Of a DNA stretch of 64,000 nucleotides, positions 17,163 through 36,568 are shown piece by piece (position 1 is the stretch's first letter; every line of letters starts with the position of its first letter). Source of the stretch: Penicillus capitatus (lineage: Eukaryota; Plantae; Chlorophyta); the NCBI GenBank assembly GCA_965649825.1, contig OZ287708.1, forward strand, positions 670,780 to 734,779, read 5' to 3'. Made by a program: the position numbers and the translations under genes. The notes under the pieces were generated by a model. That model saw only the letters and a program-made list of their open reading frames with translations, was not told the origin of the DNA and did not search any database.

Positions 17163-18111
17163 ATGTCGACTTTCTCTCCCAAACGCCCTGACAGCCGTGC
17201 GAAAGTAGTCGACGTTTTGTTCGCGCAGCAAGTGAACCCTCTGCGCGTCTGTTCACAGGATAGATACTCCCCGTCCGGGCCAAACGTAACGTTTACGCGT
17301 AACGCAGGTCCAAAGGAGCTACCAGGTATCCGGCACGTTTCCTTCGTCCGGTGACTCTTTGAATGACCTCTTCGTTTGTCATACCCTGCAGGAACTGCTG
17401 TGTATGGCCTTCAGGAAATTCCTGTCAAACGACCGCAAAAGTCTCGATACTCTCTGCAGCCATCCATGCATGCATCAAAGTGCTCTACTGTTGCAGAGAC
17501 AAGTTTGAAAAGTCAAAGGCTGAATTAAATGTCAAGCAGAGTAAGATTCGGCCCAGTATCAACACCAAAATGCGCAAAGTCATGGAGTCGAACCGAAGGA
17601 ACCCCATTGCCATGAATCCCATCGTGTGTCTCGATTTGGCCTGTTGGCCAGCCACGCATTCTTGCTGACGTGTATGGTTGTGCTGTGTAGATTCCGTCTG
17701 GTAGCAAGAGAGATACCCCAACGTTCCGGTCGTCTCCTGGCAATCCCCTAAATCATCATCAAGGCGAAAAGGGCGTCAATGGTGTAAGTGCCTCGTCTGA
17801 TGGCAGCGATGAACATAAGTAACTGAACACTGTTGTGTTTGTCTGTTGTTCAGAATGCGCTTCGTTCTTCGTCGCGATATGCAGCACGATTGAAATTCGA
17901 GGCCGCTCACTCGAATTCCCCAGCATCTGACGAAAACAAATATGCAAGTCAGTGGGAAGCATGTCGCAACGTAAAAGAAGCAAAAACCAAAGAGACTTCC
18001 ATTCTTCGAACACATCCTCATGGTGCCACTCAAGGACTTATTTATCACACCCGGCCGGATGGCCTGTCTCTTCCAGGACTTGGCTATGGCACCCCTTCTT
18101 GTCAGTCATAA
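17163..18111 (+). CDS. hypothetical multi-exon protein
   Basis: Five consecutive GT-AG introns keep one frame from ATG 17163 to TAA 18111. No family recognised. Confidence 0.55.
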
Positions 18112-18795
18112 TGCAATTTACATTCCTCATATACACAAGCGTCCTCTTACGTCAGTGTGTGTTATGTGAGTGAGGGAAGGTCGAATAAGATTTCCGAGTC
18201 AACTACCACTATATCCTTTCTAAATCATTCTATCCTTGAAGATAATGGCACAGCAATTGTGCATGACTTCAATTCTTTATGTTGCTCGACGTTTGTGCAT
18301 GCATCACAACGACTGACTGTCTTGCGATTTTATTCGATCATCTGCCGGAAGAAATCTTATGCTGTGGGCCTCGGTTTCGATCAAGAATGCAGCTTTGCTG
18401 CGGGCACTCTTGACAATCAATCACAACGTGTTGGCTGGTTGGCTGGCACGCAAGCATCTGCAATCCATTCCTAAATCAGAACGTTGTCGTTGTCGACAGT
18501 GATGTCCTCCTCTTTGTCGTTTCCACGTCAATGCTAATGCTGCTACTGTTGTTGTTGTTGCTGTCATGAACGACTTCCGACATAGCATTCGCTCATAAGC
18601 GTGACTGTTCTTCGTGTGCCTGCTTGCCTGCCGTATTATTGTGTAACAAGCACTTAGATTTCTCTCGATAGTTGTCCTACTTTCTGAGTGAGGATCGATA
18701 TTTCGCCAGACTGTTGTCGAAAATTCTTAGTCCATTCACTTATGAAACAAAGAAACAACCCAGAATCACAGTATGAAAGTGTGGGACCAGGATGA

Positions 18796-21700
18796 ATGAA
18801 GACTTGGGAAATGACAGATAAACGTGGAGAGAAGGGTTGCTTCGATTGGATGCCATATCCGATCGAACGCATTCCTCTGACAATTCGCCTTCATTGTTTG
18901 CTCTCATTTTGCAAGCGGTGCATTTCTGGTCGCTCTTGTGTCATCAAGCTATGCCGGAATCTGGCAATAAAGGAATTACAACTCTTGCGCATATCTGACG
19001 GGCTTTATGCGTCATGTCTAATGCTGACCGAGAGACATCAAGAAGCCGTGTTTCTGTTCAAACTAGCAGAGATCGGCAATCGTTTGCTGTTTGTTGTGAA
19101 AAGTTTTGTCATGGTCTGGGAACGCGATGTGACAGCTCAGCGTGTAGATGTCTGCCAGTCAGTCAGGCACAACAACATGAACTCCTGCCTGCACACTCAT
19201 CTCTTCAATGCTCAACGTTTCGAGGGCGCACATCGAAGACGTCATTGCGCAGCTGGCGTCCCAGACGCTGTTAGATGTTGGTCGACCCGTCGATCTCACT
19301 CGGACCGATGGCGCCATCGATTATCTCTTGCTTACCGCGCCGAGTGGCAAAGCTGTCGTCTACGAAGTGGCAACCCCAAGGGATCTGCATCGGCTTTCTC
19401 TTGTTGAATTGGCGCTGACGACACGGTGAGGTTAGATGTTATGGTGGAGGTAGCAAAGAGACAGGATGTAGGGAAGCGGAGCGGGTTTATGTATTGCCAA
19501 AGGGGCTGCAAATCTATGATGCGCTGTTTGGACTCGATTTCCAGACGCTCGCCGATCTTTCGTGCGAATCGCTTGAGACTCTCAAAGAAGACGCCCAACA
19601 GCAACGGACGTGCGAGGTGCACAATAATCTCATCGTATGGCTGGAAAACAGTCAGATCGTGGTGGTGCACATTACGGGAACCTACTGTGCCCGATAACAT
19701 CGATCACTCTCACACATTGTAACGACTGTCGATGTGTGTGCAGTTGAGAAGGTATGCTGTTCCGTCATATCGAATTTTACAGAAACAGAAACGGTGAGAA
19801 AGTGTGACCAGGGAGATTGAAGCACCACATGTTCTGCTGTTATCTAGATGCGCGTTACAACGCTGTCCACAGTGGACGTGGATGTGGGTCCTCTGTGTCA
19901 ATTGGTACTCAGTGGGCAAAACCTAGGCGTCGTACTTAAGAGTCACTGCCGTATGGTGGCTGCACGGTCTTCTCACACGATTCAGATATTTAAACTCGAA
20001 AACTCGCAACTAACACATATTGGCTATGTTCGACATCCTGGTGTTCGATTAACGGATATGCAGTTCTGCCCTTACTCTTACCCAGAGCTGACCTATTGTT
20101 GCTCCGATGGATCGATCCATGCTGTCCGACTAGACAAGACGTTTGAAAATCTGCCAATGCCACTCCACTCGACGGAATGGGCAGCACGTAGTGATCTGCT
20201 GGAGGACGAAGAGACAACAAAGTGTCTGTGCTGTTACGGGATGCATCCAAGACAAGTGCTGTTTTCCCTGAAGAACAGTCTTTCTTCTGTGCACGGAGGA
20301 TCGGGTGCGTTGTTTCGCAGAGAGGGATATCCATCGTGACGTTGAGTGTATACACAGGCACTTCCATCGTGAGTGAGGTCTTGTTGGAGTATGATGAGAG
20401 TGAGAGTATTCAGAGTTTGCAGACAACACAGTCGGCTGTGGATGGATCTACCATGCACGATCCATTTCTTCTGGCCGTCATGACGAACAAACGCATCAGA
20501 TTACACGACCTGCGCACACTTCCGGACATTCTGCTGTCCTGGGAACTCGTTTTTGATTGTCGACTACCGGACATCATGCATTTTACGCTCGAACCAGATA
20601 TCTTTTCAGGCGGGAACGAAGAAGGAACGGAGATGCAGACCGGTCTCACGCATGTGCGTGTGGGTCGCATTGTTTATGGGAGCAGAACATCGGGGGACAT
20701 GTATCAGACGTTCTTTCGAATTGGCGATCCTCAGATGGCGGTGCACATAACGCCCACCAAGACATCGCGCCGGCGATACCGAATTTCGTTTGAGAATCTG
20801 GACAAGGCAAAACGACAGTTACCTGTTGTCCACACACGTTTTCGCCAGTATCTGGATATTCCCTATCTTCTCTGCAGCAGCCTTGCTGAACACGATGACG
20901 ATATTCACAGCAGAGCTGTCCATCTCGCCAGAATTGCACGGCGGCGGCATGCATTGGATCCTCAACAGAAAAGACTGTTGCCTCTTGAAGAAATGCGCCA
21001 ATGGAGAGAACTGTTGCAACATTCCGAAGACATCTGTGGATCTGGATGGATCTCACTGCCACACATCGATGGTTATATTCGCGGAGTGCTCATCCGGATG
21101 AACGCTGTCGGCGATCTCATTATTCAACCGATGACAACGTGGTCACGCGAACGTCCTAGGAATGTTCGCCGCCACTCTGTTTCGCAATGGAAGGTGCTGC
21201 AAGAAGAGGATCTGGATTTGAGTGATGCATGTGACTGGAGAGGAGCCGATCGGCGAATTGACCTCTCCAAGTTCGATTTAGGCATCCACATTCCATCAAG
21301 GCGATGGGATGCCGTTGATCGGGAAGACGTCACAGAAGCAGCAAAGTTTCGATGTGGAATTCCTTCATATCTGCTCAGCAGTCACATCAAGCATTCTATT
21401 GAATTATCGCATCCAGATGTTGTACCGAGACGGAAGCAAAGTCTGCAGAGAATGGCAAGAGGGTCGCAGAAAAAGACGCCCTGTTTGCCAATGAATCTTC
21501 ACCGAAAGCATTTGCAGAAATACGATTCCGCAAAACCGTTTCCGGTCTCAGACAGCAGCAAAGTGTTTTGGGCAGAAGCAGATCTTGCTGCCGTACTTGG
21601 CGGCGACACAGGGACAACGCTGTGGAGCTGTGTAGAGGATCTCAAGTGGAAAATCATGTCCAAGATGCAAGGAGGCGACACACGATCTCCCAAGAATCCC

Positions 21701-22258
21701 GAATCCAAAGGCGATTCAGAACGAGAAACAGAAATACAGGCAATTGCCATTAAACCGTGGAAATCCGATGCCAAAACCTTTCGACTTATTCAAAGAAAGT
21801 GCTGCAAGATGCCGGAGAAAAGAGTACGGGCTTTAGCATCTCTGATCAGCTCAAATCATCCTGTGTTTTCACCGTCAGACGAGCAGATGATGAAAGAGGT
21901 TCTTCAACAGCACGCAGCAACATCTGCTGGAATTCGACAGACCCTTGTTAAATCAAGACCACCTTCGTACATCCCGATGGACAATCTGTGTGATGCGGAG
22001 AAGAAGGACAAGTGGGAATATGGAAGTGACGCATCCAATGGCGCAGATGTTGTTTTTCTCCCAGTGTGGACAGCGGAGAGGGGTGGAGTGGAGGCCAGAA
22101 TCACATTTGAAGCTCCTTGCTACCAACCATTCATGGAATTCCCTCAGACAGAAGAGGGAGAGGCAGGCATCCAAGAGATGCTGAATCTGTGGCGAAACGA
22201 ATGGCAAGAAGGGCACCAGGGAACGATGCACGAGCACATCGAATCTGATGCATCATAA
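18796..22258 (+). CDS. RNA polymerase I SL1/core factor subunit TAF1C (Rrn6)-like beta-propeller protein
   Basis: MQFCPYSYPELTYCCSDGSIH, YGMHPRQVLFSL and FLLAVMTNKRIRLHDLRTLPDILLSWE resemble plant TAF1C motifs. Long last exon. Start approximate. Confidence 0.55.
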
Positions 22259-22759
22259 TCTTTAATAAAAGACACCGATATACCGTTCAAGGATTCATGA
22301 CCGCACACAGAAGTGTCAAGCGAGCATTATTTTCCCATGTGTGCCGTGCAGACAAAGCAGGCAGATTTTTCCTGTGCCGTTGGATGTGACATCACAGATG
22401 AAGGTGACTTGATGTGACTGCAGAGGCCGTGGACCAGACATCTCTTCCGTCAGCATGCCAATTACAGATTAAGTGTGTCAAACAAATCAATGGTCAAACG
22501 CTTTTGTGGAGCTGTGCTCTTTTCAGCGGAACGATGCGATTTCTCGCGAACATCTCTCAGTTTTTGTTCAGCATGCGAATGATCTACACACATCGCTCTT
22601 TTCTCAGAGAACCGCCGATACGTTGGCAACCTACTGCTTCATTCGGAAAGATGCCAATGTTATCTAGTCCCTTTTGAAAGGTCTAAAACACACAACGCAT
22701 CTCGTTTCTGTGACAGCGGCCTTAAGGCGTGTTTCAGCAAATGGATGGCGTCACGATCA

Positions 22760-23106
22760 TCACAGCGTCATCAGTCCGAACGCAAAGTCCGTCATCACGA
22801 ACAGCACTGCCTCGTTGTCGCTTACTTTGCGAACAATGTGGTTGTAGTGCCTCTCTGCTGTCTGAGTTTCGGTTTGAGGATCGAGGTAGCCACTCGAACG
22901 GCGCGTCTTGGTGCACCTAGTTACGCAGAAATGGTATTTTTGGACGAGGCGCCGACGCGGAGAGGACATTACATGAGGTCGGGGTCGGACACGAGGAGTC
23001 GTGATATGAATCCCGTAAAGCCAAGTGCCGCCGCAGAGGTAAAGAATAGAATAGGGTATGCCTCGGGAACGAGAAATCGTCTCAAGTTTGTCGTCACCGC
23101 GGCCAT
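22760..23106 (-). CDS. B12D/NDUFA4 (MLRQ) family small mitochondrial membrane protein
   Basis: MAAVTTNLRRFLVPEAYPILF...SDPDL|..TKTRRSSGYLD...ERHYNHIVRK. One GT-AG intron. Confidence 0.78.
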
Positions 23107-23303
23107 TTCTGTAGGATCGAGCGTCGAACCGAAAGAATAAGCGAATTGGCGAAGAATGAAAGCACGCACGTAGATCTCGAATTTATACAACGACGGAGAG
23201 GCAAATGATGAAGATCATGAAAGCGACGTCGCCGAGGGAAATAATGACAGAGATGGTTTTGACGAATTTTCTCGTTTCGCGGAAAGTGTCACCCTTTGTG
23301 ACG

Positions 23304-24307
23304 ATGTCGAGCGCGATGATCGATTCTGTCAAGTGGCTGAATGGCTGGATTCAATTGTTGACCAGCGACCCCTATCGGTTTTCAGCGGTAGTGGTTGTGA
23401 TATCACTCCTTTTCTGGACGGTCCAGCAACTCTACGATCGTTGCGTTGCCTCCTGTGTCGTCCTCGCCCGTTCACTTGTCGTATATGTTGCAGTGGGGTA
23501 CGAGTGGTGGAATCGAAAAACAATTCTGATCGTTGGCCCTTCACGCTCCGGAAAGACCACACTGTTCTGCAAGGTCAACTATCGCAGACTCCTGTGCGCT
23601 CGCTCTACACATGACAACATCTATAGTTAACGGGGAGAGATGTTGGCAACTTGACGCCGACACACGACCCACGGAAGGCACTTCGAAAAGTGAGATTGGC
23701 ACCACATGTCGTCGCAGATGTGTGACGAGATGCTGTAGGTCGGCAAGGGATGGATGTCTTATGTGACATTGGTAGATCTGCCTGGGAGTTCTTCTCTGTC
23801 GCGCCATACGGATATATGGATAAGGAAAGCCGATGCTGTGATCTTCGTCATCGACGGCGCTGCTTATCGAGAGACTGTCCATGATGCAGCAAAGTCTCTG
23901 GTCCTCTCTGTCGCTCTCTTGCTAAGCGCGTTTTGCAGGAAGCTGCACAAGATCACAGAGGATCCTGTTCTGCAGAGAACAAAACGTGCCCCGACACTCA
24001 TTGCTGTCAATAAGAGTGACTTGGGCGCCAGAGTACACACAACGCGGTTCATCAAACACAACCTGCAGTGCGAGATGTGGGTCTCTCTGGTCGAGTCTTT
24101 GATGTTTGAATGTCTATCGAGACTGTGTGTAGTGATGACATTCGGATGCAGGAGAAACGCAATGGGTCAGGAGAGGGCTTTTCTTTTGATAAGGTCCCCG
24201 GTACGCTGGTTTTTGCATCCATGTCTTCTAAGCTTAATGCCTACAACCCCGTCATACAGTTTCTGGAAAAAGTGCACGAGGGACACCCGGCTGTGTGGAG
24301 GAGATGA
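23304..24307 (+). CDS. SRPRB: signal recognition particle receptor beta subunit
   Basis: N-terminal TM segment, GPSRSGKT P-loop, LVDLPG, VIFVIDG, AVNKSD, and C-terminal GEGFSF...VIQFLEK. Confidence 0.78.
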
Positions 24308-24374
24308 ACTGAACGAGTCATATAGGTGTTAGAATCGCATTACAGACAGAGATGATTGTGCCTGTGGATGTCTA

Positions 24375-26398
24375 TTATGTGAACGAATCTTGCTTGAGTG
24401 ATTGCGTGTGTCTTGAATGTGTGACCCATTCCGTCACACTTCTTCCATCACACTTTTGCCATGGGACACTCAAGAATCCTGGCTGATCTGTAAAAACTCT
24501 CTGTGCTTTGGAAACCTCTGTCTGTAGCGAATGCAATGCTTCATGTCCCTTGGATATAAATGCATCAATCTTATCCATAGCCTCCTGTGTCTCTTTCGTG
24601 TGATTCTCGTCCTTTTCTGCCAGTCTTAGAGTATGAGATACGAGAGAATGTATATCAGCGGATATTTCAGACTGCCGATGTAGGAGCAGCTCGCGAAGAG
24701 ATGCATGAAAGAGCGTCGATTGGAGAGCTGCTGAAACGTGAGCGAAAAGCGCATCTGGAGCTTCGATCTTGAGCAGTGGAGCTGCTTGCTTCAACTCCGT
24801 CACCACCTGAAGCAGCATCACTTACAGATCTCGACTACCTTGACTCGAATACACACTTCTTTGAGAGAGGCCGTCGAATAGGGGATACTCTCTGTACTTC
24901 CCATCTCTGTCAAGACATTATCCCATCGCTGCAGAAGCGGAAGGTCTGGCGTATCGTGTGTGACATCCTGTTTGCGGAGACTGGCTTCCTTTCGTCTGCC
25001 GACGAGATCGACTTGTCGATACTTCTCGAGTTCTTTGCCCACTTCTTGTTGCAATTCCTTGAGGCTCTCCAGACATGTGGATACAACCGAAGGCAATGAC
25101 TTCTCGAGTTTCGTTTTCACCACTTCGGCCGTTGCTTCGAAATCTTTCTGGAGCTGATGCAGCTGATCTCTGCCGTGTAGCAAAAGAAGATCCATTTGAT
25201 GAGATTGTTCCACTTGATCCTGCACCTGTCGATAGAGACCTTTCGCCTGTTTCTGTGCCTCTTCGCCTGACGAATATCCCTTTGCCATTTGCTCGATCTC
25301 TTTTTTGAGCACTTCGATCTCACTCTCGAGGCAGAGACCATCGAGTTGACTGTTGAAGCTCTCGCGGCATTCAGTCGCTTCTACAGCTGCTAGAAATTTC
25401 TGAACAGTTGACGATTGTTTCAAAGCTGCCAGTCGTCTCTCATTGGCATCTTCTATTCGATGCCGTTCTGCAAAGGACTTGAAACCGGCCATCAGCATTT
25501 CCTCGATCGCTTTTGTCTGAGGAGCATAGACTGCTACACCCGTGTCTTCTGTCGTACAGCTAGCGCACTTTGCCTCGAATTGCGATGCTCCAAATAGGGC
25601 CTCCTCACCAGCGATTTTGAAGAATTGTGTTAGACGACGGCTGTGATGAGCATAGAGACAACCCATATCTGTCATGAGTTGACTGATGACAGGGTCCTTG
25701 ACTTCTGGACAAGCTTCGATTCTGGGAAACACCTCCTGTGCTGTCAGCATTACACCCATCGGACGCTTCCTCAGTTTTTGGCTCAGACCATCGCTCATGA
25801 AATCATACATTGTATACAGCACAGATTCAAAATCTGCCATCCCGATCTCTTCCTCCTCCTGCATAGCTTTCCGCACCGATCCATTGTGCTTCGACAGAAA
25901 ATGCATCTCCTTATCCATCGACTTGATCGCTTCTTCTGTTCGGCCAGTTACCGCGGCGAGAACTTTCGATCGTTGCACTCGACTCTCCATAACGGCTCTC
26001 TGTCTCGCAGTCTCGCTCTCCACTTTGCCCAAGTCATTAGCGAGTTGCGACACGTGTGATTTGAGTCTATCGATCTCGATCCCGTATTGCTCGGCCCTTT
26101 GTCTGAGCTTCTGAATGCGTTTGATCTGATTGCGGCGTTTCTCCATGTCCTCTTGCGTTCTTTGGCGCATCTCCAGCGTCGCCTGTCTTTGGAGTTTGAT
26201 CTCGACTTTGTGTTTCATTTCTTTGACGACATCTGGTGGACGGCACGCAACAAAAAGGGCATTCCACACGTCCATCATCTCGCCTCGGCACAGAGGCATG
26301 AGGCTCTCTTTCTTGAGGCCCTGACCTCGATATCCCATTTCTTTGAGCCAACGCGAAACATCTCTTTCCGTTCCACTGCTCGTAAACGCACGATACAT
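24375..26398 (-). CDS. HAUS5: augmin subunit HAUS5/AUG5
   Basis: N-terminal RWLKEMGY...LCRGEMMDVWNAL motif followed by long coiled coils. Two exons. Confidence 0.8.
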
Positions 26399-26461
26399 TG
26401 GCGGACGTCACGATCGAACGAACAAACGAACGCATTCTTGCGACAGACACCTAGAGATCGT

Positions 26462-27928
26462 TCAGTCCCCCAAGACGACAGGTGTTTCCTCGAAAAGCCG
26501 GACGCCAATTCGAACGTGTCGTGCATTTGCTTCGCTGTACTTGGCGGCAACGTCTTCATTCGGCATGAGAATATCGTCAGCGATTGGCACTCCTTGCTCC
26601 TGAACGTATGAGGCCACAGACTGATCTCCTGAGACGGCACCGGCTTGAAGAGCAGCACCCAGAGCAGCAGATTCGGGTTCCAAAGGAAACCGTAGAGGTA
26701 CTTGGAAAGCATCGGCAATGATGCGTCTCCATAAACGATTTTTGGATCCTCCTCCCACAACTCTGAGCTCCTTGATCGTCATACCCAGCGCTTCCATCCT
26801 CTTAGACCCGTTCAATACCGTGAATGTTGCCCCCTCTAGAGCAGCGCGATAGATCAATCCCGGACGCATTGTGCCAGGAGTGAGGCCGTATAGGACGCCT
26901 CTTGCATGCGGCCAATTTGGTGTCCTTTCTCCAGTGAGGTATGGCAGAAAGCTCACTCCTTGACACCCGATCGGTTCTTTTTCGGCGAGGGCAGTCAACT
27001 CCTCGTGGCTGAGGCTGAATCCTCGCTTCACCTCTTCCACCACTCCAGTACAGCTGATAGTGCAGACCAGTGGCATCCATCGATCCGTGGCATCACAGAA
27101 TTCACACACAACACCCGTCTTATCAAGAATGGGTTTCGCCGAGCAGCCAAACAGACAAGCAGAAGTGCCCAGAGAGAGAACGACAGTCCCATCTGTGACC
27201 GCACCGGCACCCAGGGCACTCATCATGTTATCTCCTGAACCGGGCGAGACGATGACATCTGTCGACAGACCGAATGCCTCTGCCGCTGCAGGTGTCAACC
27301 TACCGATCACTGCATTTGAGTCGACAAGGGGAGGAATCTTGTCAGCCAAAGAGGGATCGACCAGATCGAGCACCTCCCGATCAAAACACTTTTTCAAAAT
27401 GTCCAGACCTCCAACTCCACTGGCATCTCCACACTCCATGCACATTCTCCCTGTGAGCCTGTAGTTGATATAATCATGTGGCAGTAACACATGTTTCAGT
27501 CGGGCGTAGTTCTCAGGCTCATTGTTCTTCATCCACAGAATCTTCGTCAGTGTAATGGAAGGGACCATGACATGGCCGAGTTTCTCTGAGAGTTCTGCCG
27601 CTTCTTTGCTGCTCTCCACATCGCACCATAGTTTTGCAGGTCGAATGATTTCGTTTTCCTCATCGAGAGCCACGAGGCCATGCTGCTGTCCACTCACTCC
27701 AATGCCCCGAATGGCACTCCGATCTTCAATTTTCTCAAGAATACAATGCACTGTCTCCTGACATGCAGCAAACCATGTCTCCGGGTGTTGTTCTGCCCGT
27801 CCCGGGACATCGGTAGAGAGCAATCCGTAGCTAACAGAGGCACGTGCCACTACCACTCTGTTTTCGTCGTCATAGAGGATCGCTTTAGTGCCTTGTGTTC
27901 CAACATCTAACCCGATCAAGAGTGGCAT
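26462..27928 (-). CDS. xylB: xylulokinase, bacterial XylB type (FGGY family), intronless
   Basis: IGLDVGTQGTKA, GIGVSGQQHGLV, RPAKLWCD, LLPHDYINY, GDNMMSALG, PYLTGERTP, VVGGGSKN..WRRIIAD. An alternative upstream ATG lies at 27982. Confidence 0.92.
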   Translation of the reverse strand: MPLLIGLDVGTQGTKAILYDDENRVVVARASVSYGLLSTDVPGRAEQHPETWFAACQETVHCILEKIEDRSAIRGIGVSGQQHGLVALDEENEIIRPAKLWCDVESSKEAAELSEKLGHVMVPSITLTKILWMKNNEPENYARLKHVLLPHDYINYRLTGRMCMECGDASGVGGLDILKKCFDREVLDLVDPSLADKIPPLVDSNAVIGRLTPAAAEAFGLSTDVIVSPGSGDNMMSALGAGAVTDGTVVLSLGTSACLFGCSAKPILDKTGVVCEFCDATDRWMPLVCTISCTGVVEEVKRGFSLSHEELTALAEKEPIGCQGVSFLPYLTGERTPNWPHARGVLYGLTPGTMRPGLIYRAALEGATFTVLNGSKRMEALGMTIKELRVVGGGSKNRLWRRIIADAFQVPLRFPLEPESAALGAALQAGAVSGDQSVASYVQEQGVPIADDILMPNEDVAAKYSEANARHVRIGVRLFEETPVVLGD

Positions 27929-28044
27929 GATTTCAGGTCGTGCTTCGACGACGGTTGTTCGAAGAGGTTGATGCACGTCCATTTCGCGGTGGACTTCGCA
28001 TTTTGGCGGTCATCTTGCTAGGCGGGTTCGAAGAGTGACAGAGG

Positions 28045-28875
28045 ATGGAGACAGCAGTAGCTAAGGCTCCATGGGACATCCTTGCGCTCGATATCATGAC
28101 ATCCATGCCCAAATCAGAGAATGGATATCGAGCAGTGCTCGTGGTCGTGGACACGGCGTCCCGTTGGTTGGAGTTGTTGCCCTTGCGTTCTGATGACCCT
28201 CTTGAAGCCGCCTTTGTTTTGGAACAAAGCGTGTTTCTGACATTTGGCCCATCCACGTCCGTTCTCTTGCCAAGCGAGAAGGCCGAATTCGAGAATCCTT
28301 TTCCAAAAATTCTGAAGAAATACGATGTGAAGCCAGGCAACCTCGACCACGCTAACCCTCAAGTGCGAACGATGGTGAGCCGTTGCCTCAAAGAAGCAAA
28401 GCGAGACCTAATTCTGATGAAACGTGAATATCCGACTGTTCCGTGGGATCATTTGCTGAAACATGTGTCTTACAAACACCGCACACGTCGTCATGTCAGT
28501 ATGACATCCACCCCTCAGAAACTTGTCTTGCCATTTACGCCTATCGAGAACACAGAGACGACGGTGGATGAAGTCATGGCCGATGACGAAGATTGTGTCG
28601 ATCCGTCGGCATCCGTCTCTATTCGAGCACAACGGGATCATCGATTGGCTTTAGAGCAGGAACGCCATTGGTTTAAGTCGAAGCTGGAGAGCTTTGGGGG
28701 ATTGTCTTTGACACTGAAAGCAGAGGCCATGAAGTCCAAGATGCTGCTGGATCATTCCGCATCGGTGACGCTCGATGGGAAGTCTCTTACATCTCCATCA
28801 AAGGCAAAAGCCATGAGAAAGAAGACCAAACACTGCTGGAGAATTGCTTCCCTGGGCGGACGACCTGTTATGTGA
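28045..28875 (+). CDS. stand-alone Ty3/gypsy-derived integrase core (rve) protein with degenerate DDE triad
   Basis: PWDILALDIM..MPKSENGYRAVLVVVDTASRWLELLPL...VFLTFGP...W..LLKHVSYKHRTRRH...TPQKL follows the gypsy integrase core. No gag, RT, RNaseH or LTR nearby. Confidence 0.75.
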   Translation: METAVAKAPWDILALDIMTSMPKSENGYRAVLVVVDTASRWLELLPLRSDDPLEAAFVLEQSVFLTFGPSTSVLLPSEKAEFENPFPKILKKYDVKPGNLDHANPQVRTMVSRCLKEAKRDLILMKREYPTVPWDHLLKHVSYKHRTRRHVSMTSTPQKLVLPFTPIENTETTVDEVMADDEDCVDPSASVSIRAQRDHRLALEQERHWFKSKLESFGGLSLTLKAEAMKSKMLLDHSASVTLDGKSLTSPSKAKAMRKKTKHCWRIASLGGRPVM

Positions 28876-29171
28876 ATAAAGAGATCAGCCAGTCGTATGA
28901 ACTCGAGAGTCTTTGGATCTTTATGCATTGTGTTTCTGAGCAGCAGAAGTAGTCGCAGTAATAGTAGCCCCTTCTATTCGTGTGTTCATTTTTTGCTTGC
29001 CGTCGTCAGAATCTTCAGCCTTTCCTAACCTACCGCTATTCATTCTTTCATCGGGAAAACAACAAGAAAAAATCAAGTCGAGAAGGGAGAGCCCTCAACC
29101 GAGCGGCTTCGTTTTCTATCGCTTATTCATAAAACACTCTGAGAGCGAAAACGGCAGAAATTGACGTATTG

Positions 29172-29872
29172 CTAGCTCTTCACTACTTTGCAGTTGTAGT
29201 AGCACCACCACCAAGGGACTGGCAGATAATAGGTCTTGTATCCAGACATTGGACATGCGTCCGAGTAACGCATGTAACAACTGCAATCGTATAGCGGACA
29301 CGCAGGCCCATCTGGAATGCCTTCTCGAGCCGCATCTGTTGGTGATCCGTCTGCAGACGTCACCCGAAGTTTCTCTACGACGAACATCCCTTACGATTCT
29401 ATCTTGTTATTTCGGGTCTATCTACCTTGCCAATTGGAATGCGCACAGATCCGATGTGGCGTCAAGTCTGGTTTCGTCGCATTGAGTTTGTAGAGAAAGG
29501 GTTCAAAGACGCTGCCGAGAATACGAATGGCGTCCGTTTCGTTGATGACGAATCCCGTCGGCGGCTCTGTGATAAACCGATAGCCAAAGCTGTGTTTCGG
29601 AACACCATATGCCTCCGCCTTCATGTGTCTCTTTTCAAACTCGGCGATATCCCACCCTAAAACGACAGCAATAAGCGCAGAGGTGATCGAAGACAAGAGA
29701 GTATCACCTGAACTCTCCTTAAGGTCAGATGGACATGCACCCTCGACTGCATTCACCCTGTGTTCGGAACACGCGGAATGGCGAGATACATCAGATGCTG
29801 ACGTTGAGCGAGAGAGGCCGTTGCCGAGAAAGCGAAGAGCAGAAAGGCGACAAATGTGATGCCACGCGCCAT
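29172..29872 (-). CDS. orphan secreted cysteine-rich protein (4 exons)
   Basis: Signal peptide MARGITFVAFLLFAFSATASLA. Three GT-AG introns join in frame to a terminal exon with C-x4-C-x-C-x7-C...C-x3-C. Confidence 0.62.
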
Positions 29873-30282
29873 TCTGACGTTGTCGACGACGCCAGAAAGG
29901 ATCGTCAAACTTTGGAATCGAAGAGGTCAATGACTGCGATCTTGTCTCATGCGAAGTACATGCCACGTTGGCGTGTCTTCCACATGGCCATGACTTTCAA
30001 GACGCCATGTCAGTGACGATCATTAGCAGAACCACGTATACCGCACCACTGTTTTTATACGAGTCGTATCGGGGAAAAGCGTTGAACGCAAATCGTCCTT
30101 TTTGGAAGCAAAGGTCGACGCTTGTGTATTTTAAAGAATCCTATAAGAAATGAAAGGACGAGTGTTGTCTCGGATGTATAGTCGAATCGCTTAGCAGAAT
30201 GGTAGCAAGCGGGCGAAACCCGCTTCCGTTAGATCCTCCGTTCACAAAGGCAACACATTTCATCTGAATTCCGTCGCAGAGA

Positions 30283-31551: not shown

Positions 31552-31571
31552 CGATGCCGACGGACTCTCCA

Positions 31572-32081
31572 ATGGCTTTTTACGGATGCAGTGGTCTAAC
31601 AGCAGATGCAGACAACGTGCTCGTCTACCCAGCCAATACGCACGTTCGCATTATTGGAAACAAAAGAACGCAGGCGTCGCTTACTGGCCAAGAGGGTATT
31701 GTGATTAAGACGGTCGGTCTGGGCGGATGGCACTGGTTGGAGCTGAAGAACGGCACAACTGTCAAAGTGCAACGCAATGCGCTCTGTCTGGTGGATGACG
31801 CTGCATCGGATAGCTGCTTTGAAGGAGCCTCGACTCCGTCTGAGAGATCCAGCACTCGTGGATGCTCAGAGTTCCATTCATTAATGGCACGTACCGCTGG
31901 CGGTGTCAACCTGCAGAAACTCAGCACGATGGCCTTGATGAGATACGCCCACCTCTATGGACTCCGCATCGGACCGCGCGTCAGTCGTGATGTCTTAATC
32001 AAACATGTACTGTGGCATTTCGAGTCGTTGTCGACCGACGAATCGTCGATTCTGACGTCTTTGTGCCAGCGAGGCCGTTAG
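31572..32081 (+). CDS. plant-type SAP30-related histone deacetylase complex subunit (AFR1/AFR2-like)
   Basis: HVRIIGNKRTQASLTGQEGIVIKTVGLGGWHWLELKNG..VKVQRNAL plus a Sin3-binding VNLQKL...L.RY...HF C-terminal domain. Confidence 0.85.
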   Translation: MAFYGCSGLTADADNVLVYPANTHVRIIGNKRTQASLTGQEGIVIKTVGLGGWHWLELKNGTTVKVQRNALCLVDDAASDSCFEGASTPSERSSTRGCSEFHSLMARTAGGVNLQKLSTMALMRYAHLYGLRIGPRVSRDVLIKHVLWHFESLSTDESSILTSLCQRGR

Positions 32082-33030: not shown

Positions 33031-34726
33031 ATGGCGTTCGTCTGTCAACCGCCTTCACGTTTTGCATCGGCTAAAACATCGGTGGTATCTCGCCAGTTAA
33101 CCCGTCCAACGCGTCGGACTGTCGTCGCTGGCAGTCGTCCTCTTTCGACATGCGCCAAACGAACAGTCACCATCAAGCCACTGACGAGATGCAAGAGAGC
33201 ATTGTCTTTCTGCAACGCAGCCGAGAATCAAATTGGTGCGTTTCTATCGACAATGCCAAGAGAGTGTGGATCTCCTCCTCTCATGCCTTGATGGCAGAAT
33301 CGGTCGGAAGCGAAAGCAGCGAAGAGGGTTGGAAACGAACCCTATTGCTAGGCAGTCTCTTTGCTGGCTGGTATATAGCAAACGTCCTTTTCAACATGCA
33401 AGTGCCGTTCTCATCTCGCCAACTGCTTTCATACGCATTGTCTCGTCACACAGTTATAACAAGGGCGTCTTGTCAGAGTACCCATGTCCGATCACGTGCA
33501 CCTGCATTCAAGTAGAGGAATCCAGATAGAGAAAGAGATAAGATACATGGCTATGAATGCTGCAGTTCGGTGTGGGTTCGATCTTGGTCTTGTTGGCATG
33601 GATCACCCGACGCATCAAGATGCCTCGAATAAACAAAGACACCGTAGGCGCATACCTTCCACAATACGCGAGCCTCCATGTTCGGTTTGTGTGATTGCGA
33701 TGCTTAGTTGTTGGCTATTCTGCCATTGGCAGTGGTACACACCCTTGGAAACTCCTTCACGAATATCAGTCTTGGACAAGTTGCCGTTTCCTTCACGCAC
33801 ACCATCAAAGTTAAGCGCTCGTGAAGAAAGGTGATGTGATGGAGAGTGCATTGTAGGCAATGGAGCCTTTCTTTTCCGTCGTGCTGTCGGCGATTTTTCT
33901 GAACGAGAATCCAACACTGCCCGTTGTTCTCTGTCTCCTGCCGATCGTGGGTGGGGTTGCAGTGGCGTCCGTAACCGAGGTCATGCGCCTTTCCCCTCTC
34001 AGCGATCCATTCTCATTGACGTGACAGGCGACTTTTACGTGGACTGGATTTCTATCGGCCATGGGATCGAATCTGACATTTCAATCACGGAATGTCTTGA
34101 GCAAGAAGACCATGGGAAGCAACAAAGTGCGATGGCTGAGCTGCTACTGATCATAACTGACCTCTTGTGTCGGATGCAGTTGGATCTGGACAACATCAGT
34201 CTCTTCTCACTCATCACAATCGCATCATTCTTTCTTCTACTGCCATTTGCTTTTGCCCTCGAAGGAGACATGTACTCCATGACCGCCATGCAAATCTTGG
34301 TCTGTATGCTCTCTTTACCAAATCGGAAGTGAGATGTGTGGTGTTTGGAGGATATTAAGAATCCGGGGCAAACGATGGTCTCGGCTGCGATGGCTGGGCT
34401 CTTTTTTCACCTTTACCAACAGGTGTGTCCGTCTCGATGCATGCCGTTCATACTTCAGGTGACTGTTTGCAGATCTCCTATATGATTCTGCAAAGGGTGT
34501 CACCAGTAACGCACTCTATTGGAAATTGCATCAAAAGGGTGATCATTATTGTTGCCACCGTCATATTCTTTAAGAATCCAATGCCATTGCAAAATCAAAT
34601 AGGTGATCCTGTCCTCTTACAGAATGGGATGTGGACACTTTGTGTCCGATAGGGACGGGTGTGGCTCTGCTAGGGGTGTTCCTCTACTCGCAAGCAAAGC
34701 GTATGGGAAAGAAAAAGGTTACATAA
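33031..34726 (+). CDS. PPT: plastid phosphoenolpyruvate/phosphate translocator (TPT family)
   Basis: [10 protein letters not shown]|[36 protein letters not shown]|[39 protein letters not shown]. Confidence 0.9.
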
Positions 34727-34750
34727 GGGATGTCTTGCAGACGCAACTTT

Positions 34751-36568
34751 TTATCGAAATCGGGGATCTCCGAACGGCAAATACCAGTTTAGCAATTCCT
34801 GTCTCTCCATTTCTTTGATCCTCTCCATCTTCTGCATCTTCATAGCGCGCTTCTCCGCCCGTTTTCTCTTCTTGACGAGCTCTTCGTGTTTCGCTCTCAG
34901 CTTGGCATAGCGTATGGGATCGACCTCTTGAATCATGGGGTCAATCTTCAGTGGACCGTAGGGTCGATCCAACTTGATCCCTGTAACGGTCCATGAACAA
35001 GAGATGCCTTTATTCGAAGCAGCCTCTACCCAATCCTTTGAGAAGCTTCACTTTGTGTGGACTGAGTTTTTGTTTGAAATAGAGCTTGTGTTGTCGCACA
35101 AGCCACCGTGCGGCGATCGTCCAGTTGGGTTCTCTGACATTATGGTAGTCTTCCGGAATGTCAGGCGTGCCAAATTTCTCCTTGTAGCGACGAACGTGGT
35201 GAAACAGACTGTACCAGCGAGCGTCCAACTGTTACCGCCAGTATACATAGCAGGCAGAAGTGGAGATGGATGGCAACAAACCTGATGGACTTTCCATTCA
35301 AAATCGAGTTCATTGAGGCGCTCTACCATCCACTCTTCAATAATCTTGCGCTTGTGCTTTCTGCGAACACGATGCACCCACTCTCCCAAGACATGGGCAT
35401 CAAATACATTCCTAGATCACTGCTGCTGCATAGAAGTGGGTAAGTTTCTGCGGCGACCTTGGGACATGACAGGTGTAGTACTTAAGGCGCCATTCCTCTA
35501 GTTGTCTGAACATGGTCTCGAAATCCATCAGGGGTTTGTTTCCGTATTCCTCCACGGACTGCGAAAAGATTTCGGCATAGGTCTCATCATCCACGCGGCT
35601 TTCGGGCACGACCTTGCCCAAATCATAACCCAAACTTCTCAGTTTCAACACCTAAAATGCAGACTTTCGCCGCCACTGCCCCATCCAATACAGATAAAAC
35701 CTTATCAGGGGAGAGACGTCTTTCTTGATACAGGACTTTCTGTTCGCGAAACCATCGCGGAAAAGCATTTGGCCAATCATCCGTTTTCCATCTGTTTGGC
35801 ACATTCAGATTTCCATAGACAGCTTTGAATCTCCGCAGTTCATGAAACATCGTGTGCCACACGGCATCTTCCTAACAGACAGCACCGGCTCATGGAATCA
35901 CACATCCTCTATTCAATGAGAGCCGATCGAACAATGTCACGTGACCAGATGAATCCAGTCTCTTGGAGCAGATCCCGTTCTTGCACGGTCATCCATCTCA
36001 GATTGTAACGTGTTTTCTGTTCGGATACCCATTTCCCCAGCTCTTGATTATCCCATAGGGTCTTTGGCACTTGGAGATCGTGGTAGAGCTTCTTGAACAC
36101 CTTCAGCTCCTTTATTTTCACGAGGAAATCTTCTGACGGCTCTCCAGATGGGAAACTGTTGGACGAGTGCGGCCTCTGGAACGGTCGCTTTCTCCAACGC
36201 TGCTGCGCTTTCAGTTTCTTCAAACTCGTCACCGCATTGTCCGTCATTTCGGGATCTGGTAACTGGATCACACGTGAACGTGGACGCTGTTCACCCAGAA
36301 TCAATGCATCATCTTTATGATCCGCCACACTCTAGCCCCCACTCCACACAGGAACCGCCTTCTCAGAAGACATCACCTGTGGTACGGGTGCCCATTCGCG
36401 CGGAACCGTTCGTCGAGGGGGTGGTGCGCGTCGAGGGGTATTGGGTAGATTTCTTAAGCGAAAAGGCTTAGCTGGATGTGTCTCGCTCGAGAAATGGTGC
36501 ACGATAGGGACAATATACCGATGGGCTGTAAGCATCGCCTTTCTCAGCATGACCGCGTTAGGTCGCAT
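34751..36568 (-). CDS. helicase-associated (HA) domain repeat protein, probably mitochondrial
   Basis: Four W/F..MF..L..F...YG...VP.....LG.WV..Q.......L......L..LGF.W repeats. Basic presequence-like N-terminus. No helicase motifs. Confidence 0.8.

What the first reader, a model, noticed from the sequence alone, without database searches (positions are those of the whole stretch)
28045..28875. Domesticated, catalytically dead Ty3/gypsy integrase as a stand-alone host-like gene
Seen: an intact ATG-to-stop ORF that is only the rve core. The first catalytic Asp is kept (LALD16), the second Asp site (canonical I.SD.G..F) reads VLLPSEKAEF, and the Glu site (canonical PQ.NG..ER) reads PQVRTMVSR. There is no HHCC finger and no gag, RT, RNaseH or LTR, and only 62-116 bp separate it from the xylB start, so no element body lies upstream. 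Established: integrase-derived host genes (GIN1, NYNRIN, SCAND3) are known in animals. Inference: an independent algal domestication acting as a DNA-binding or anti-retroelement factor.
Basis: partly seen in the sequence, partly recalled or inferred. Interest (0 to 1): 0.75.

Follow-up and report, generated by a model that had tools for sequence, protein, structure and literature searches.

The report
Domesticated dead integrase gene in algae
A green-alga-like genome carries a single-copy gene made from the core of a retrotransposon integrase that has lost its catalytic residues. Selection has kept it at the same chromosomal spot in at least five related lineages, making it a new, still uncharacterised example of a mobile-element protein turned into a host gene.

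Summary
Window 28045-28875 (+) is an intact 276-aa ORF whose first ~165 residues are a retroviral/Ty3-gypsy-type integrase catalytic core. Evidence for the core:
- Pfam rve scores only 18 bits, below threshold.
- A family profile against Ty3/gypsy integrases gives 99.9 % probability.
- The AF2 model matches solved integrase cores at about 3 A.

The first catalytic Asp is kept. The second is replaced (invariant Pro76/Ser77 region) and the Glu is Ser/Gly/Asn. There is no zinc finger, RT, RNase H, gag or LTR anywhere in the 64 kb.

- The protein collections searched hold only five proteins (six loci) of this family, each 255-276 aa.
- Synteny holds: xylulokinase lies 111-116 bp upstream in three lineages, and the same convergent gene lies downstream in all.
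- dN/dS is 0.07-0.23 in three independent pairs.

Three ~1.1-kb contigs look like mRNAs, but expression is not proven. The C-terminal ~90 residues are conserved and have no detectable relatives.

The flanking kinase is closest to Bryopsidales green algae. Function is inferred only; the best guess is a non-catalytic, basic nucleic-acid-binding or scaffold protein. This is a new variant of a known kind (GIN1, NYNRIN, Imagin). Interest is moderate.

The parts
28045..28875 (+). Complete intronless CDS of the integrase-derived gene (276 aa including start; stop TGA at 28873-28875)
   Evidence: ORF list and sequence. Orthologues of 255-276 aa share the same start and end.
28072..28539 (+). Integrase catalytic-core-like (RNase H-fold) domain, residues ~10-165
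   Evidence: Pfam rve residues 10-100. PDB profile hit over 6-166. hhalign columns 8-178, probability 99.9 %. AF2 pLDDT 70-87 with b1-b2-b3-a1-b4-a-b5-a4-a5 topology, and Foldseek hits to integrase cores.
28090..28092 (+). Codon of D16, the retained first catalytic Asp (Glu in the most distant orthologue P0005)
   Evidence: Alignments with Ty3, PFV and Ty3/gypsy integrases.
28270..28278 (+). P76-S77-E78, the site of the lost second catalytic Asp. P76 is invariant in the family. Residue 78 is E/E/D/D/N, so it is not a conserved acid.
   Evidence: HMMER and MAFFT place the Asp on P76. hhalign places it on S77. Family alignment.
28378..28380 (+). Codon of S112, which replaces the catalytic Glu (S/S/G/N/S in the family). 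The following R113 and the K119-R120 pair in helix a4 are invariant.
28612..28764 (+). Family-specific conserved C-terminal region (residues ~190-240, IRAQRD..ALEQER.WF.S.LE.F..L.L.LKAEA..SKML.D). It is predicted as two helices at low confidence.
   Evidence: 29 invariant columns in alignments A1/A5. dN/dS of the C-terminal half is 0.12-0.36. It does not align to Ty3/gypsy integrases. No Pfam or PDB match. AF2 helices 189-214 and 222-235 have pLDDT below 55.
27929..28044 (.). Short divergent intergenic region shared with xylulokinase; putative bidirectional promoter and 5' UTR. It holds the conserved motifs TGGACTTC and GGGTG..TTTG.AG.
   Evidence: 91 % identical to L001. The motifs are conserved in L006 and L004. 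The 1.1-kb contigs L003 and L005 begin next to TTGGACTTC.
26462..27982 (-). Upstream divergent neighbour: FGGY-family xylulokinase (conserved start at 27928)
   Evidence: Pfam FGGY_N and FGGY_C. The same arrangement is found in L001 and L006.
28876..29262 (+). Putative 3' UTR. It runs ~90 nt into the 3' end of the convergent neighbour's CDS (an inference from where the contigs end).
   Evidence: Alignment of downstream regions. L003, L004 and L005 end within ~20 nt of each other.
29172..29387 (-). Last coding part of the convergent downstream neighbour (ends ...GYKTYYLPVPWWWCYYNCKVVKS*). This is the 3' synteny anchor, present in every locus.
   Evidence: No Pfam family.

Best explanation
This is a host gene, not a transposon remnant. 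An ancestor of a small clade of green-alga-like organisms retained only the catalytic-core module of a Ty3/gypsy-type integrase as a single-copy, intronless gene. The flanking genes are closest to siphonous Bryopsidales.

The gene lost the N-terminal HHCC zinc finger, the C-terminal SH3/chromo module and two of the three metal-binding carboxylates. Canonical two-metal DNA cleavage and strand transfer are therefore impossible. Selection has kept the RNase H-like fold, very strongly conserved helices a1 and a5-a6, an invariant Lys-Arg pair on helix a4, and a new ~90-residue helical C-terminal extension.

The most likely mode of action is inferred, not shown. The protein would be a basic (pI 9.1-9.9), non-catalytic nucleic-acid- or chromatin-binding protein, or an oligomeric scaffold, using the old DNA-binding groove and dimer surface of the integrase core. 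It would be expressed from a ~115-bp bidirectional promoter shared with xylulokinase.

Shown: fold, loss of the triad, single copy, synteny, purifying selection. Inferred: expression, dimerisation, nucleic-acid binding, nuclear role.
For: - Fold and ancestry: hhalign probability 99.9 %, E = 2.9e-32, against Ty3/gypsy integrase cores. The AF2 core matches solved integrase cores at rmsd 2.3-3.2 A. The best outside relatives are RVT_1/RT_RNaseH/Integrase_H2C2/rve polyproteins.
- Dead site: D16 is kept (Glu in one orthologue). The second Asp is replaced by Pro/Ser, and the Glu by Ser/Gly/Asn, in all five proteins.
- Not an element: no RT, RNase H, gag or protease similarity in 64 kb, no LTR-like repeats, one copy, and neighbours 62-116 bp upstream and ~300 bp downstream.
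- Host-gene behaviour: five proteins of equal length at 56-86 % identity. Collinearity with L001 over 11.9 kb and with L002 over ~13 kb downstream. The xylB-gene-convergent-gene arrangement recurs in L006.
- Selection: dN/dS is 0.23 (P = 2e-10), 0.15 (P = 4e-26) and 0.07 (P = 5e-12), in both halves of the protein. The neighbours score 0.10-0.13 by the same method.
- Rate: the gene diverges only a little faster than the kinase (62 % against 72 % identity, window against L006).
- Charge: the core is basic, pI 9.1-9.9.
- Transcript-like contigs with shared ends and conserved upstream motifs.
- Precedent: Imagin and GIN2 are integrase-derived genes that lack the DDE triad and are under purifying selection.
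Against: - No experiment or RNA-seq mapping was available. The 1.1-kb contigs could be genomic fragments.
- The C-terminal half is modelled at low confidence, so no structural function can be read from it.
- No orthologue appears in the predicted proteomes of Caulerpa or Bryopsis. The gene is therefore young or lineage-restricted, or annotation pipelines removed it as TE-like (describes such filtering for Ostreobium).
- The alignment register at the second Asp is ambiguous by one or two residues. Four of five orthologues have an acid at position 78.
- Organism identity rests on one flanking gene plus a plant-type domain nearby.
Confidence: 0.78

Rival explanations
1. Anti-retroelement factor. 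The dead core keeps the integrase dimer or tetramer interface and poisons the intasomes of incoming or resident Ty3/gypsy elements. It would be a dominant-negative restriction gene analogous to the gag- or env-derived Fv1 and Fv4.
For: Helices a1 and a5-a6 form the core dimer interface in retroviral integrases (established structural knowledge). They are the most conserved parts of the family. The catalytic residues are lost while the fold is kept. An anti-retroviral role has been proposed for the integrase-derived CGIN1.
Against: Identity to any transposon integrase is only 22-33 %, so present-day heteromerisation is doubtful. The gene evolves under steady purifying selection, with no sign of an arms race in three pairs. 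No closely related element is seen in the window or among 1.84 billion representatives.
Confidence: 0.13
2. Decaying fragment of a retrotransposon whose ORF survives by chance.
For: It scores below the Pfam rve threshold, has lost catalytic residues, is intronless and has no annotated function.
Against: The same-length ORF is intact in six loci at down to 56 % identity. dN/dS is 0.07-0.23. Flanks are conserved on both sides. There is no element body or LTR, and only one copy.
Confidence: 0.02
3. Still an enzyme. A nuclease or transferase with a rebuilt, non-canonical active site that uses D16 with the nearby acid at position 78 or other invariant acids (D11, D36, E81, E83).
For: D/E16 is kept in all five orthologues. 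Four of five have Glu or Asp one to two residues after the canonical second Asp. The register there is ambiguous.
Against: Position 78 is Asn in P0005. The Glu position is Ser/Gly/Asn in all. Pro76 is invariant at the position of the Asp. D11 and D36 are conserved structural residues in active integrases too.
Confidence: 0.04
4. One exon of a larger spliced gene, or a mis-assembled or contaminant piece.
For: Neighbouring genes have many ~50-nt introns, so single-ORF reading could mislead.
Against: The start codon, the upstream stop and the stop codon agree across orthologues. The upstream neighbour is on the other strand 62-116 bp away, and the downstream one is convergent. Independent assemblies from ENA, JGI and Logan give the same structure.
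Confidence: 0.03

Closest known systems
Imagin (integrase-like gene of malacostracan crustaceans; PMC12863088)
   Same: A single-copy, syntenic host gene derived from an rve-type integrase. It is under purifying selection, the RNase H-like core is preserved, and the catalytic DDE residues are lost. A nucleic-acid-binding or scaffold role has been proposed.
   Different: [quoted passage not shown] The algal gene is intronless, has no zinc finger, starts at the core and carries an unrelated conserved C-terminal extension. The lineages are unrelated, so the events are independent.
GIN1 / GIN2 (vertebrate Gypsy-integrase genes; PMC3424704)
   Same: Host genes with an integrase core related to LTR-retrotransposon integrases. 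Their function is unknown. GIN2 has no clear DDE triad.
   Different: Both keep the HHCC finger, and GIN1 keeps the residues needed for activity. Both derive from GIN/Ginger DNA transposons and have introns. The algal protein is core-only, and its best relatives are mostly RT-linked. Sequence relatedness to GIN1/2 was not tested directly.
NYNRIN/CGIN1, KRBA2, SCAND3 (mammalian 'cellular integrases'; PMC3424704, PMC3575427)
   Same: An integrase domain recruited into a host gene.
   Different: In those proteins the domain is fused to cellular modules (NYN, KRAB, SCAN). Here the protein is stand-alone, with only a short lineage-specific tail.
Ty3/gypsy (Metaviridae) integrase, e.g. Ty3 in PDB 7q5b, and the PFV integrase core
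   Same: The same catalytic-core fold and the same conserved framework motifs: PWD...D, VVD..S.W, FG.P and P.Q...R.
   Different: There is no zinc finger and no SH3/chromo C-terminal domain. Two of three catalytic carboxylates are gone. It is not part of a pol polyprotein, has no LTRs and is single-copy.

Membership tests
Retroviral/retrotransposon integrase catalytic-core superfamily (Pfam rve, PF00665; RNase H-like fold) | Significant sequence-profile similarity to the rve core | tested here: met
   A single sequence fails the Pfam cut-off (18 bits against 32.6). The family profile passes clearly: PDB PFV integrase E = 6.5e-4, 127 hits below 1e-10 in the representative library, and hhalign probability 99.9 %, E = 2.9e-32.
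Retroviral/retrotransposon integrase catalytic-core superfamily (Pfam rve, PF00665; RNase H-like fold) | Five-stranded mixed sheet with flanking helices (b1-b2-b3-a1-b4-a-b5-a4...) | tested here: met
   AF2 model residues 11-150 at pLDDT 70-87. Foldseek top 50 are all integrase structures (catalytic cores or intasome chains); over the core alignments TM (target) is 0.55-0.75 and rmsd 2.3-3.8 A. The model rests on a five-sequence alignment.
Retroviral/retrotransposon integrase catalytic-core superfamily (Pfam rve, PF00665; RNase H-like fold) | D,D(35)E catalytic triad | tested here: not met
   D16 is present (Glu in P0005). The second Asp is replaced by P76/S77. The Glu is replaced by S/G/N112 in all five proteins. 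It is a structural member and a pseudo-enzyme.
Ty3/gypsy LTR retrotransposon (as a mobile element) | gag, protease, RT and RNase H coding capacity next to the integrase | tested here: not met
   tblastn of ten full polyproteins hits only 28042-28908, essentially the integrase core. Host genes lie 62-116 bp upstream and ~300 bp downstream.
Ty3/gypsy LTR retrotransposon (as a mobile element) | Flanking long terminal repeats; multiple dispersed copies | tested here: not met
   No direct repeat of 40 bp or more in 18-40 kb. One copy in the window. Each cluster sits on one or two contigs. Whole-genome copy number was not testable.
Ty3/gypsy-type integrase lineage (ancestry only) | Nearest relatives are integrases linked to RVT_1 + RT_RNaseH + Integrase_H2C2 (not copia RVT_2) | tested here: met
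   Of the 32 best long hits: rve 32, H2C2 28, RT_RNaseH 21, RVT_1 16, RVT_2 0. No formal phylogeny was built, so a Ginger-type intermediate is not excluded.
Domesticated (exapted) transposable-element gene | Orthologues at a conserved chromosomal position in several lineages | tested here: met
   L001 is collinear over 11.9 kb. L002 is collinear downstream over ~13 kb. L006 has both neighbours. L003 and L004 have the downstream neighbour.
Domesticated (exapted) transposable-element gene | Purifying selection on the coding sequence | tested here: met
   dN/dS is 0.23, 0.15 and 0.07, with Fisher P from 2e-10 to 4e-26. Both protein halves are below 1.
Domesticated (exapted) transposable-element gene | Loss of the features needed for mobility | tested here: met
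   No LTRs, no RT or gag, and a broken triad.
Domesticated (exapted) transposable-element gene | Expression as an mRNA or protein | tested here: inconclusive
   Three ~1.1-kb contigs from three samples start 75-113 nt before the ATG and end within ~20 nt of each other. One has an adapter stub at its 5' end. The sample types could not be looked up.
GIN1/GIN2/Imagin/NYNRIN families (orthology) | HHCC/H2C2 zinc finger N-terminal to the core; metazoan distribution; introns or fusion partners | tested here: not met
   The protein begins 9 residues before the core, with an upstream stop. It is intronless and sits in an alga-like genome. Direct sequence comparison with these proteins was not run.

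The most novel reading that the evidence does not exclude
The gene is the first integrase-derived restriction factor. A catalytically dead, core-only integrase would co-assemble with the integrases of Ty3/gypsy elements, or occupy their DNA ends, and so block integration in the multinucleate cells of siphonous green algae. The family-specific C-terminal helices would supply the inhibitory or targeting function.
Probability: 0.1. Interest if true: 0.8.

Novelty: new variant of a known kind. Interest (0 to 1): 0.45.

Why it matters
Integrase-derived host genes have been described almost only in animals (GIN1/2, NYNRIN, KRBA2, SCAND3, Imagin). For nearly all of them the function is still unknown. 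My literature searches found no algal or green-lineage example.

This family is the smallest such protein seen here: just the core plus a short new tail. It is intronless, single-copy and clearly constrained. That makes it a compact system for asking what a dead integrase core is good for, whether DNA or RNA binding, dimer scaffolding or transposon control.

It also illustrates a practical problem. All five proteins carry no precomputed Pfam domain. Pipelines that discard TE-like proteins would remove the gene, so such genes are probably under-counted in algal genomes.

Tried and rejected
- Diatom or chlorarachniophyte origin. I first suspected a diatom (GC ~49 %, HA and LHC domains in L002) and then a chlorarachniophyte (its plastid is related to Bryopsidales). 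The kinase's best named hits are green algae: Caulerpa 64 %, Bryopsis and Symbiochloris 59 %. No named chlorarachniophyte or diatom entry appears among the top 120. Published chlorarachniophyte genomes have 27 % and 45 % GC and do not fit. Ostreobium (GC 52.4 %, coral metatranscriptomes) is a plausible relative but is unproven.
- Non-coding RNA downstream. A conserved block ~300 bp past the stop looked like a non-coding RNA. Rfam found nothing. The block is the C-terminal coding end of a convergent gene.
- C-terminal half as the integrase linker helix. hhalign aligned only columns 8-178, so this was rejected.
- Search with the C-terminal alignment alone. It returned nothing, not even the family itself, so it is uninformative. 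The PDB search gave only noise.
- JGI metagenome DNA scan. It only re-found the known contig.
- Accession look-ups in the literature for the source samples. These found nothing.
- Actin in L001 as a taxonomic marker. It turned out to be an actin-related protein and was not useful.
- Donor element. The closest integrases come from arthropods and unnamed environmental eukaryotes, so no donor lineage can be named.

Full report
**1. The observation**

Window 28045..28875 (+) is an intact ATG-to-TGA ORF of 276 codons. An in-frame stop lies two codons upstream of the ATG.
- ILALD16IM.
- VLLPSEKAEF (residues 73-82).
- PQVRTMVSR (residues 105-113).

The nearest upstream ORF is an FGGY-family xylulokinase on the opposite strand (Pfam FGGY_N 1.7e-56, FGGY_C 1.4e-29). 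Its longest-ORF ATG is 62 bp away. The Met conserved in relatives (M19, position 27928) is 116 bp away.

**2. Is it an integrase core?**

On its own the protein is a marginal match:
- Pfam rve E = 0.0035 at 18 bits, below the 32.6-bit gathering score.
- Ty3 integrase in PDB 7q5b, E = 0.11.

This explains why all family members carry no precomputed Pfam domain. Evidence from the family as a whole is decisive:
- A five-sequence profile hits the prototype foamy virus integrase core at E = 6.5e-4.
- In a library of 1.84 billion representatives it finds 127 proteins below 1e-10. Essentially all match only profile positions ~5-165.
- Profile-profile comparison with 16 of those integrases gives probability 99.9 %, E = 2.9e-32, over columns 8-178.
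- The AlphaFold2 model has pLDDT 70-87 for residues 11-150, with the b1-b2-b3-a1-b4-a-b5-a4-a5 order of an RNase H-like integrase core.
- Its 50 best PDB matches are all integrase structures (PFV, HIV-1, MMTV, HTLV/STLV, ASV/RSV, Ty3), most of them catalytic cores. The core alignments have rmsd 2.3-3.8 A over ~135 residues.

The best outside relatives have the Ty3/gypsy order of domains (RVT_1, RT_RNaseH, Integrase_H2C2, rve, often SH3_Tf2-1). Among the 32 best long hits:
- 28 carry the H2C2 finger.
- 21 carry RT_RNaseH.
- 16 carry RVT_1.
- None carries copia-type RVT_2.

These hits come from arthropods and unnamed environmental eukaryotes, so no donor lineage can be named. A Ginger-like DNA-transposon intermediate is not excluded.

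**3. Is it catalytically dead?**

In alignments with Ty3, PFV and seven Ty3/gypsy integrases:
- The first Asp aligns with D16, which is Glu in the most distant orthologue.
- The second Asp aligns with Pro76, invariant in the family. hhalign places it on Ser77 instead.
- The Glu aligns with Ser112, which is Ser, Ser, Gly, Asn, Ser across the family.

An acid one or two residues further on (position 78) is E/E/D/D/N, so it is not conserved. Canonical two-metal chemistry needs all three carboxylates (established integrase enzymology). The protein is therefore a pseudo-enzyme.

The N-terminal zinc finger is absent, because the protein starts nine residues before the core. The SH3/chromo C-terminal domain is also absent.

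**4. Transposon fragment or host gene?**

*No element body.* Ten complete Ty3/gypsy polyproteins match the 64-kb window only at 28042-28908, essentially the integrase core; one alignment runs on to the end of the ORF. There are no direct repeats of 40 bp or more in 18-40 kb. There is no second copy in the window.

*A very small family.* Among 5.8 billion proteins the family has five members: the window's own protein, then 86, 61, 58 and 56 % identity, at 255-276 aa. A 97 % variant of one member was also found. In the 50 %-identity library only one representative scores below 1e-30. The next hit drops from 495 to 78 bits.

*Conserved gene order.*
- L001 (2.2-Mb contig) is collinear with window 18044-29934 at 86.8 % nucleotide identity. 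It shows the order HAUS5, xylulokinase, this gene.
- L006 (2.6 kb) shows xylulokinase, 111 bp, this gene, then the convergent neighbour.
- L002 (81 kb, 56 % orthologue) is collinear with the window for ~13 kb downstream but not upstream.
- All loci end in the same convergent gene, whose product ends ...YLPVPWWWCYYNCK.

*Selection.* Nei-Gojobori dN/dS values:

| Pair | dN/dS | Fisher P |
|---|---|---|
| window vs L001 | 0.23 | 2e-10 |
| L003 vs L004 | 0.15 | 4e-26 |
| L003 vs L006 | 0.07 | 5e-12 |

Both the core and the C-terminal half are below 1 in every pair. The neighbours xylulokinase and HAUS5 score 0.10 and 0.13 by the same method. Between the window and L006 lineages the gene is 62 % identical and xylulokinase is 72 %. 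It evolves like an ordinary, moderately constrained host gene.

**5. Expression**

There is no direct evidence. Three ~1.1-kb contigs from three samples (L003, L004, L005) begin 75-113 nt upstream of the ATG, inside the short intergenic region. They end within ~20 nt of each other, ~250 nt past the stop. One carries an Illumina adapter stub at its 5' end.

That pattern fits mRNA-derived assemblies with a transcription start near a conserved TTGGACTTC motif. I could not look up what kind of samples they are.

**6. The C-terminal half**

Residues ~190-240 are strongly conserved, with 29 invariant columns, and under purifying selection. They do not align with the post-core region of Ty3/gypsy integrases. 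They have no Pfam or PDB match.

AF2 predicts two helices at low confidence. A database search with this region alone returned nothing, not even the family. I treat that search as uninformative.

**7. Organism**

- The flanking kinase is closest to Caulerpa lentillifera (64 %), then Bryopsis and Symbiochloris (59 %), then other Chlorophyta.
- A nearby ORF has a plant-type PUB62-63_C domain.
- L002 encodes a chlorophyll a/b-binding protein.
- Neighbouring genes have ~50-nt GT..AG introns.

This points to a green alga near the siphonous Bryopsidales. Ostreobium, which is genetically diverse in coral skeletons, is a plausible relative but is unproven. No orthologue appears in the annotated proteomes of Caulerpa or Bryopsis. 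That is weak evidence, because pipelines often discard TE-like proteins.

**8. How it probably works (inference)**

- The fold is preserved and the chemistry is gone.
- The core is basic, pI 9.1-9.9.
- Helix a4 carries an invariant K119-R120 pair. From my own knowledge of HIV-1 integrase, K119 falls at the spacing of the DNA-contacting Lys159 relative to the lost Glu.
- The most conserved blocks are a1 and a5-a6. These form the core dimer interface in retroviral integrases.

The most economical reading is a dimeric, non-catalytic nucleic-acid- or chromatin-binding or scaffold protein. The same reading is proposed for Imagin.

A dominant-negative anti-retroelement role is possible. It is less likely given 22-33 % identity to any transposon integrase and steady purifying selection.

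**9. Comparison with known systems, and novelty**

Integrase-derived host genes are known in animals:
- GIN1 and GIN2 keep the HHCC finger, and GIN1 also keeps the catalytic residues. Both derive from GIN/Ginger DNA transposons.
- CGIN1/NYNRIN is a fusion with a cellular gene.
- SCAND3 and KRBA2 derive from the GINGER2 clade.
- Imagin has lost the DDE triad, keeps the H2C2 finger, is multi-exon, and derives from Ginger1.

The present family works like these but is not a member of any of them. It is core-only, intronless, carries a new C-terminal module, and sits in a green-alga-like lineage. Literature searches for an algal or diatom precedent found none.

I rate it a new variant of a known kind, of moderate interest. 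The domestication is solidly supported, and the function is open.

Noticed in passing
window 61125-63691: GC-rich minisatellite with a 73-77-bp period, roughly 30 repeat units in all, ~75-85 % matches. It explains the GC rise to 0.55-0.62 and the AT skew at the window end. The 358-aa ORF at 61679-62755 (-) is just the repeat read through.
   Followed up: partly
window 27929-28044; L006 1176-1286; L004 1-112: Non-coding motifs are conserved upstream of the gene in lineages whose proteins are only ~60 % identical: TTGGACTTC (~60 nt before the ATG) and GGGTG[CG][AG]TTTG[CA]AG (~25 nt before). The short contigs L003 and L005 start next to the first motif, which may mark the transcription start of a bidirectional promoter shared with xylulokinase.
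   Followed up: partly
window 29172-29966 (-): Convergent neighbour gene with a Cys/Trp-rich C-terminus (...CPMSGYKTYYLPVPWWWCYYNCK*). It is conserved in all related loci, has no Pfam family, and its 3' end appears to overlap the 3' UTR of the integrase-derived gene.
   Followed up: partly
window 33300-36400 (-), e.g. introns around 35230-35281 and around 34980-35029: Neighbouring genes are split into ~100-200-nt exons by very short (~50 nt) GT..AG introns. These show as regularly spaced conserved blocks against L002. The integrase-derived gene, xylulokinase and HAUS5 are intronless.
   Followed up: partly
window 27929-27982 (-): The xylulokinase ORF has 18 extra N-terminal codons in the window that are absent from the L001 and L006 orthologues. 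The real start is probably Met19 at 27928.
   Followed up: yes
window 29934 / L001 11881: The 86.8 %-identical collinear block between the window and L001 stops abruptly here, inside or just after the convergent neighbour. L002 stays collinear further downstream apart from a ~3-kb gap (window ~29.75-32.5 kb). This suggests a rearrangement or insertion in L001.
   Followed up: no
window 31554-32081 (+): Small ORF combining a SAP30 Sin3-binding region with a plant-type PUB62/63 C-terminal domain. It is a hint of green-lineage affinity.
   Followed up: no
alignment A5 (C-terminal ~90 residues of the family): The large protein search with this alignment returned no hit at all, not even the five family members found with the full-length query. 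This is a tool or filter effect I could not explain.
   Followed up: no
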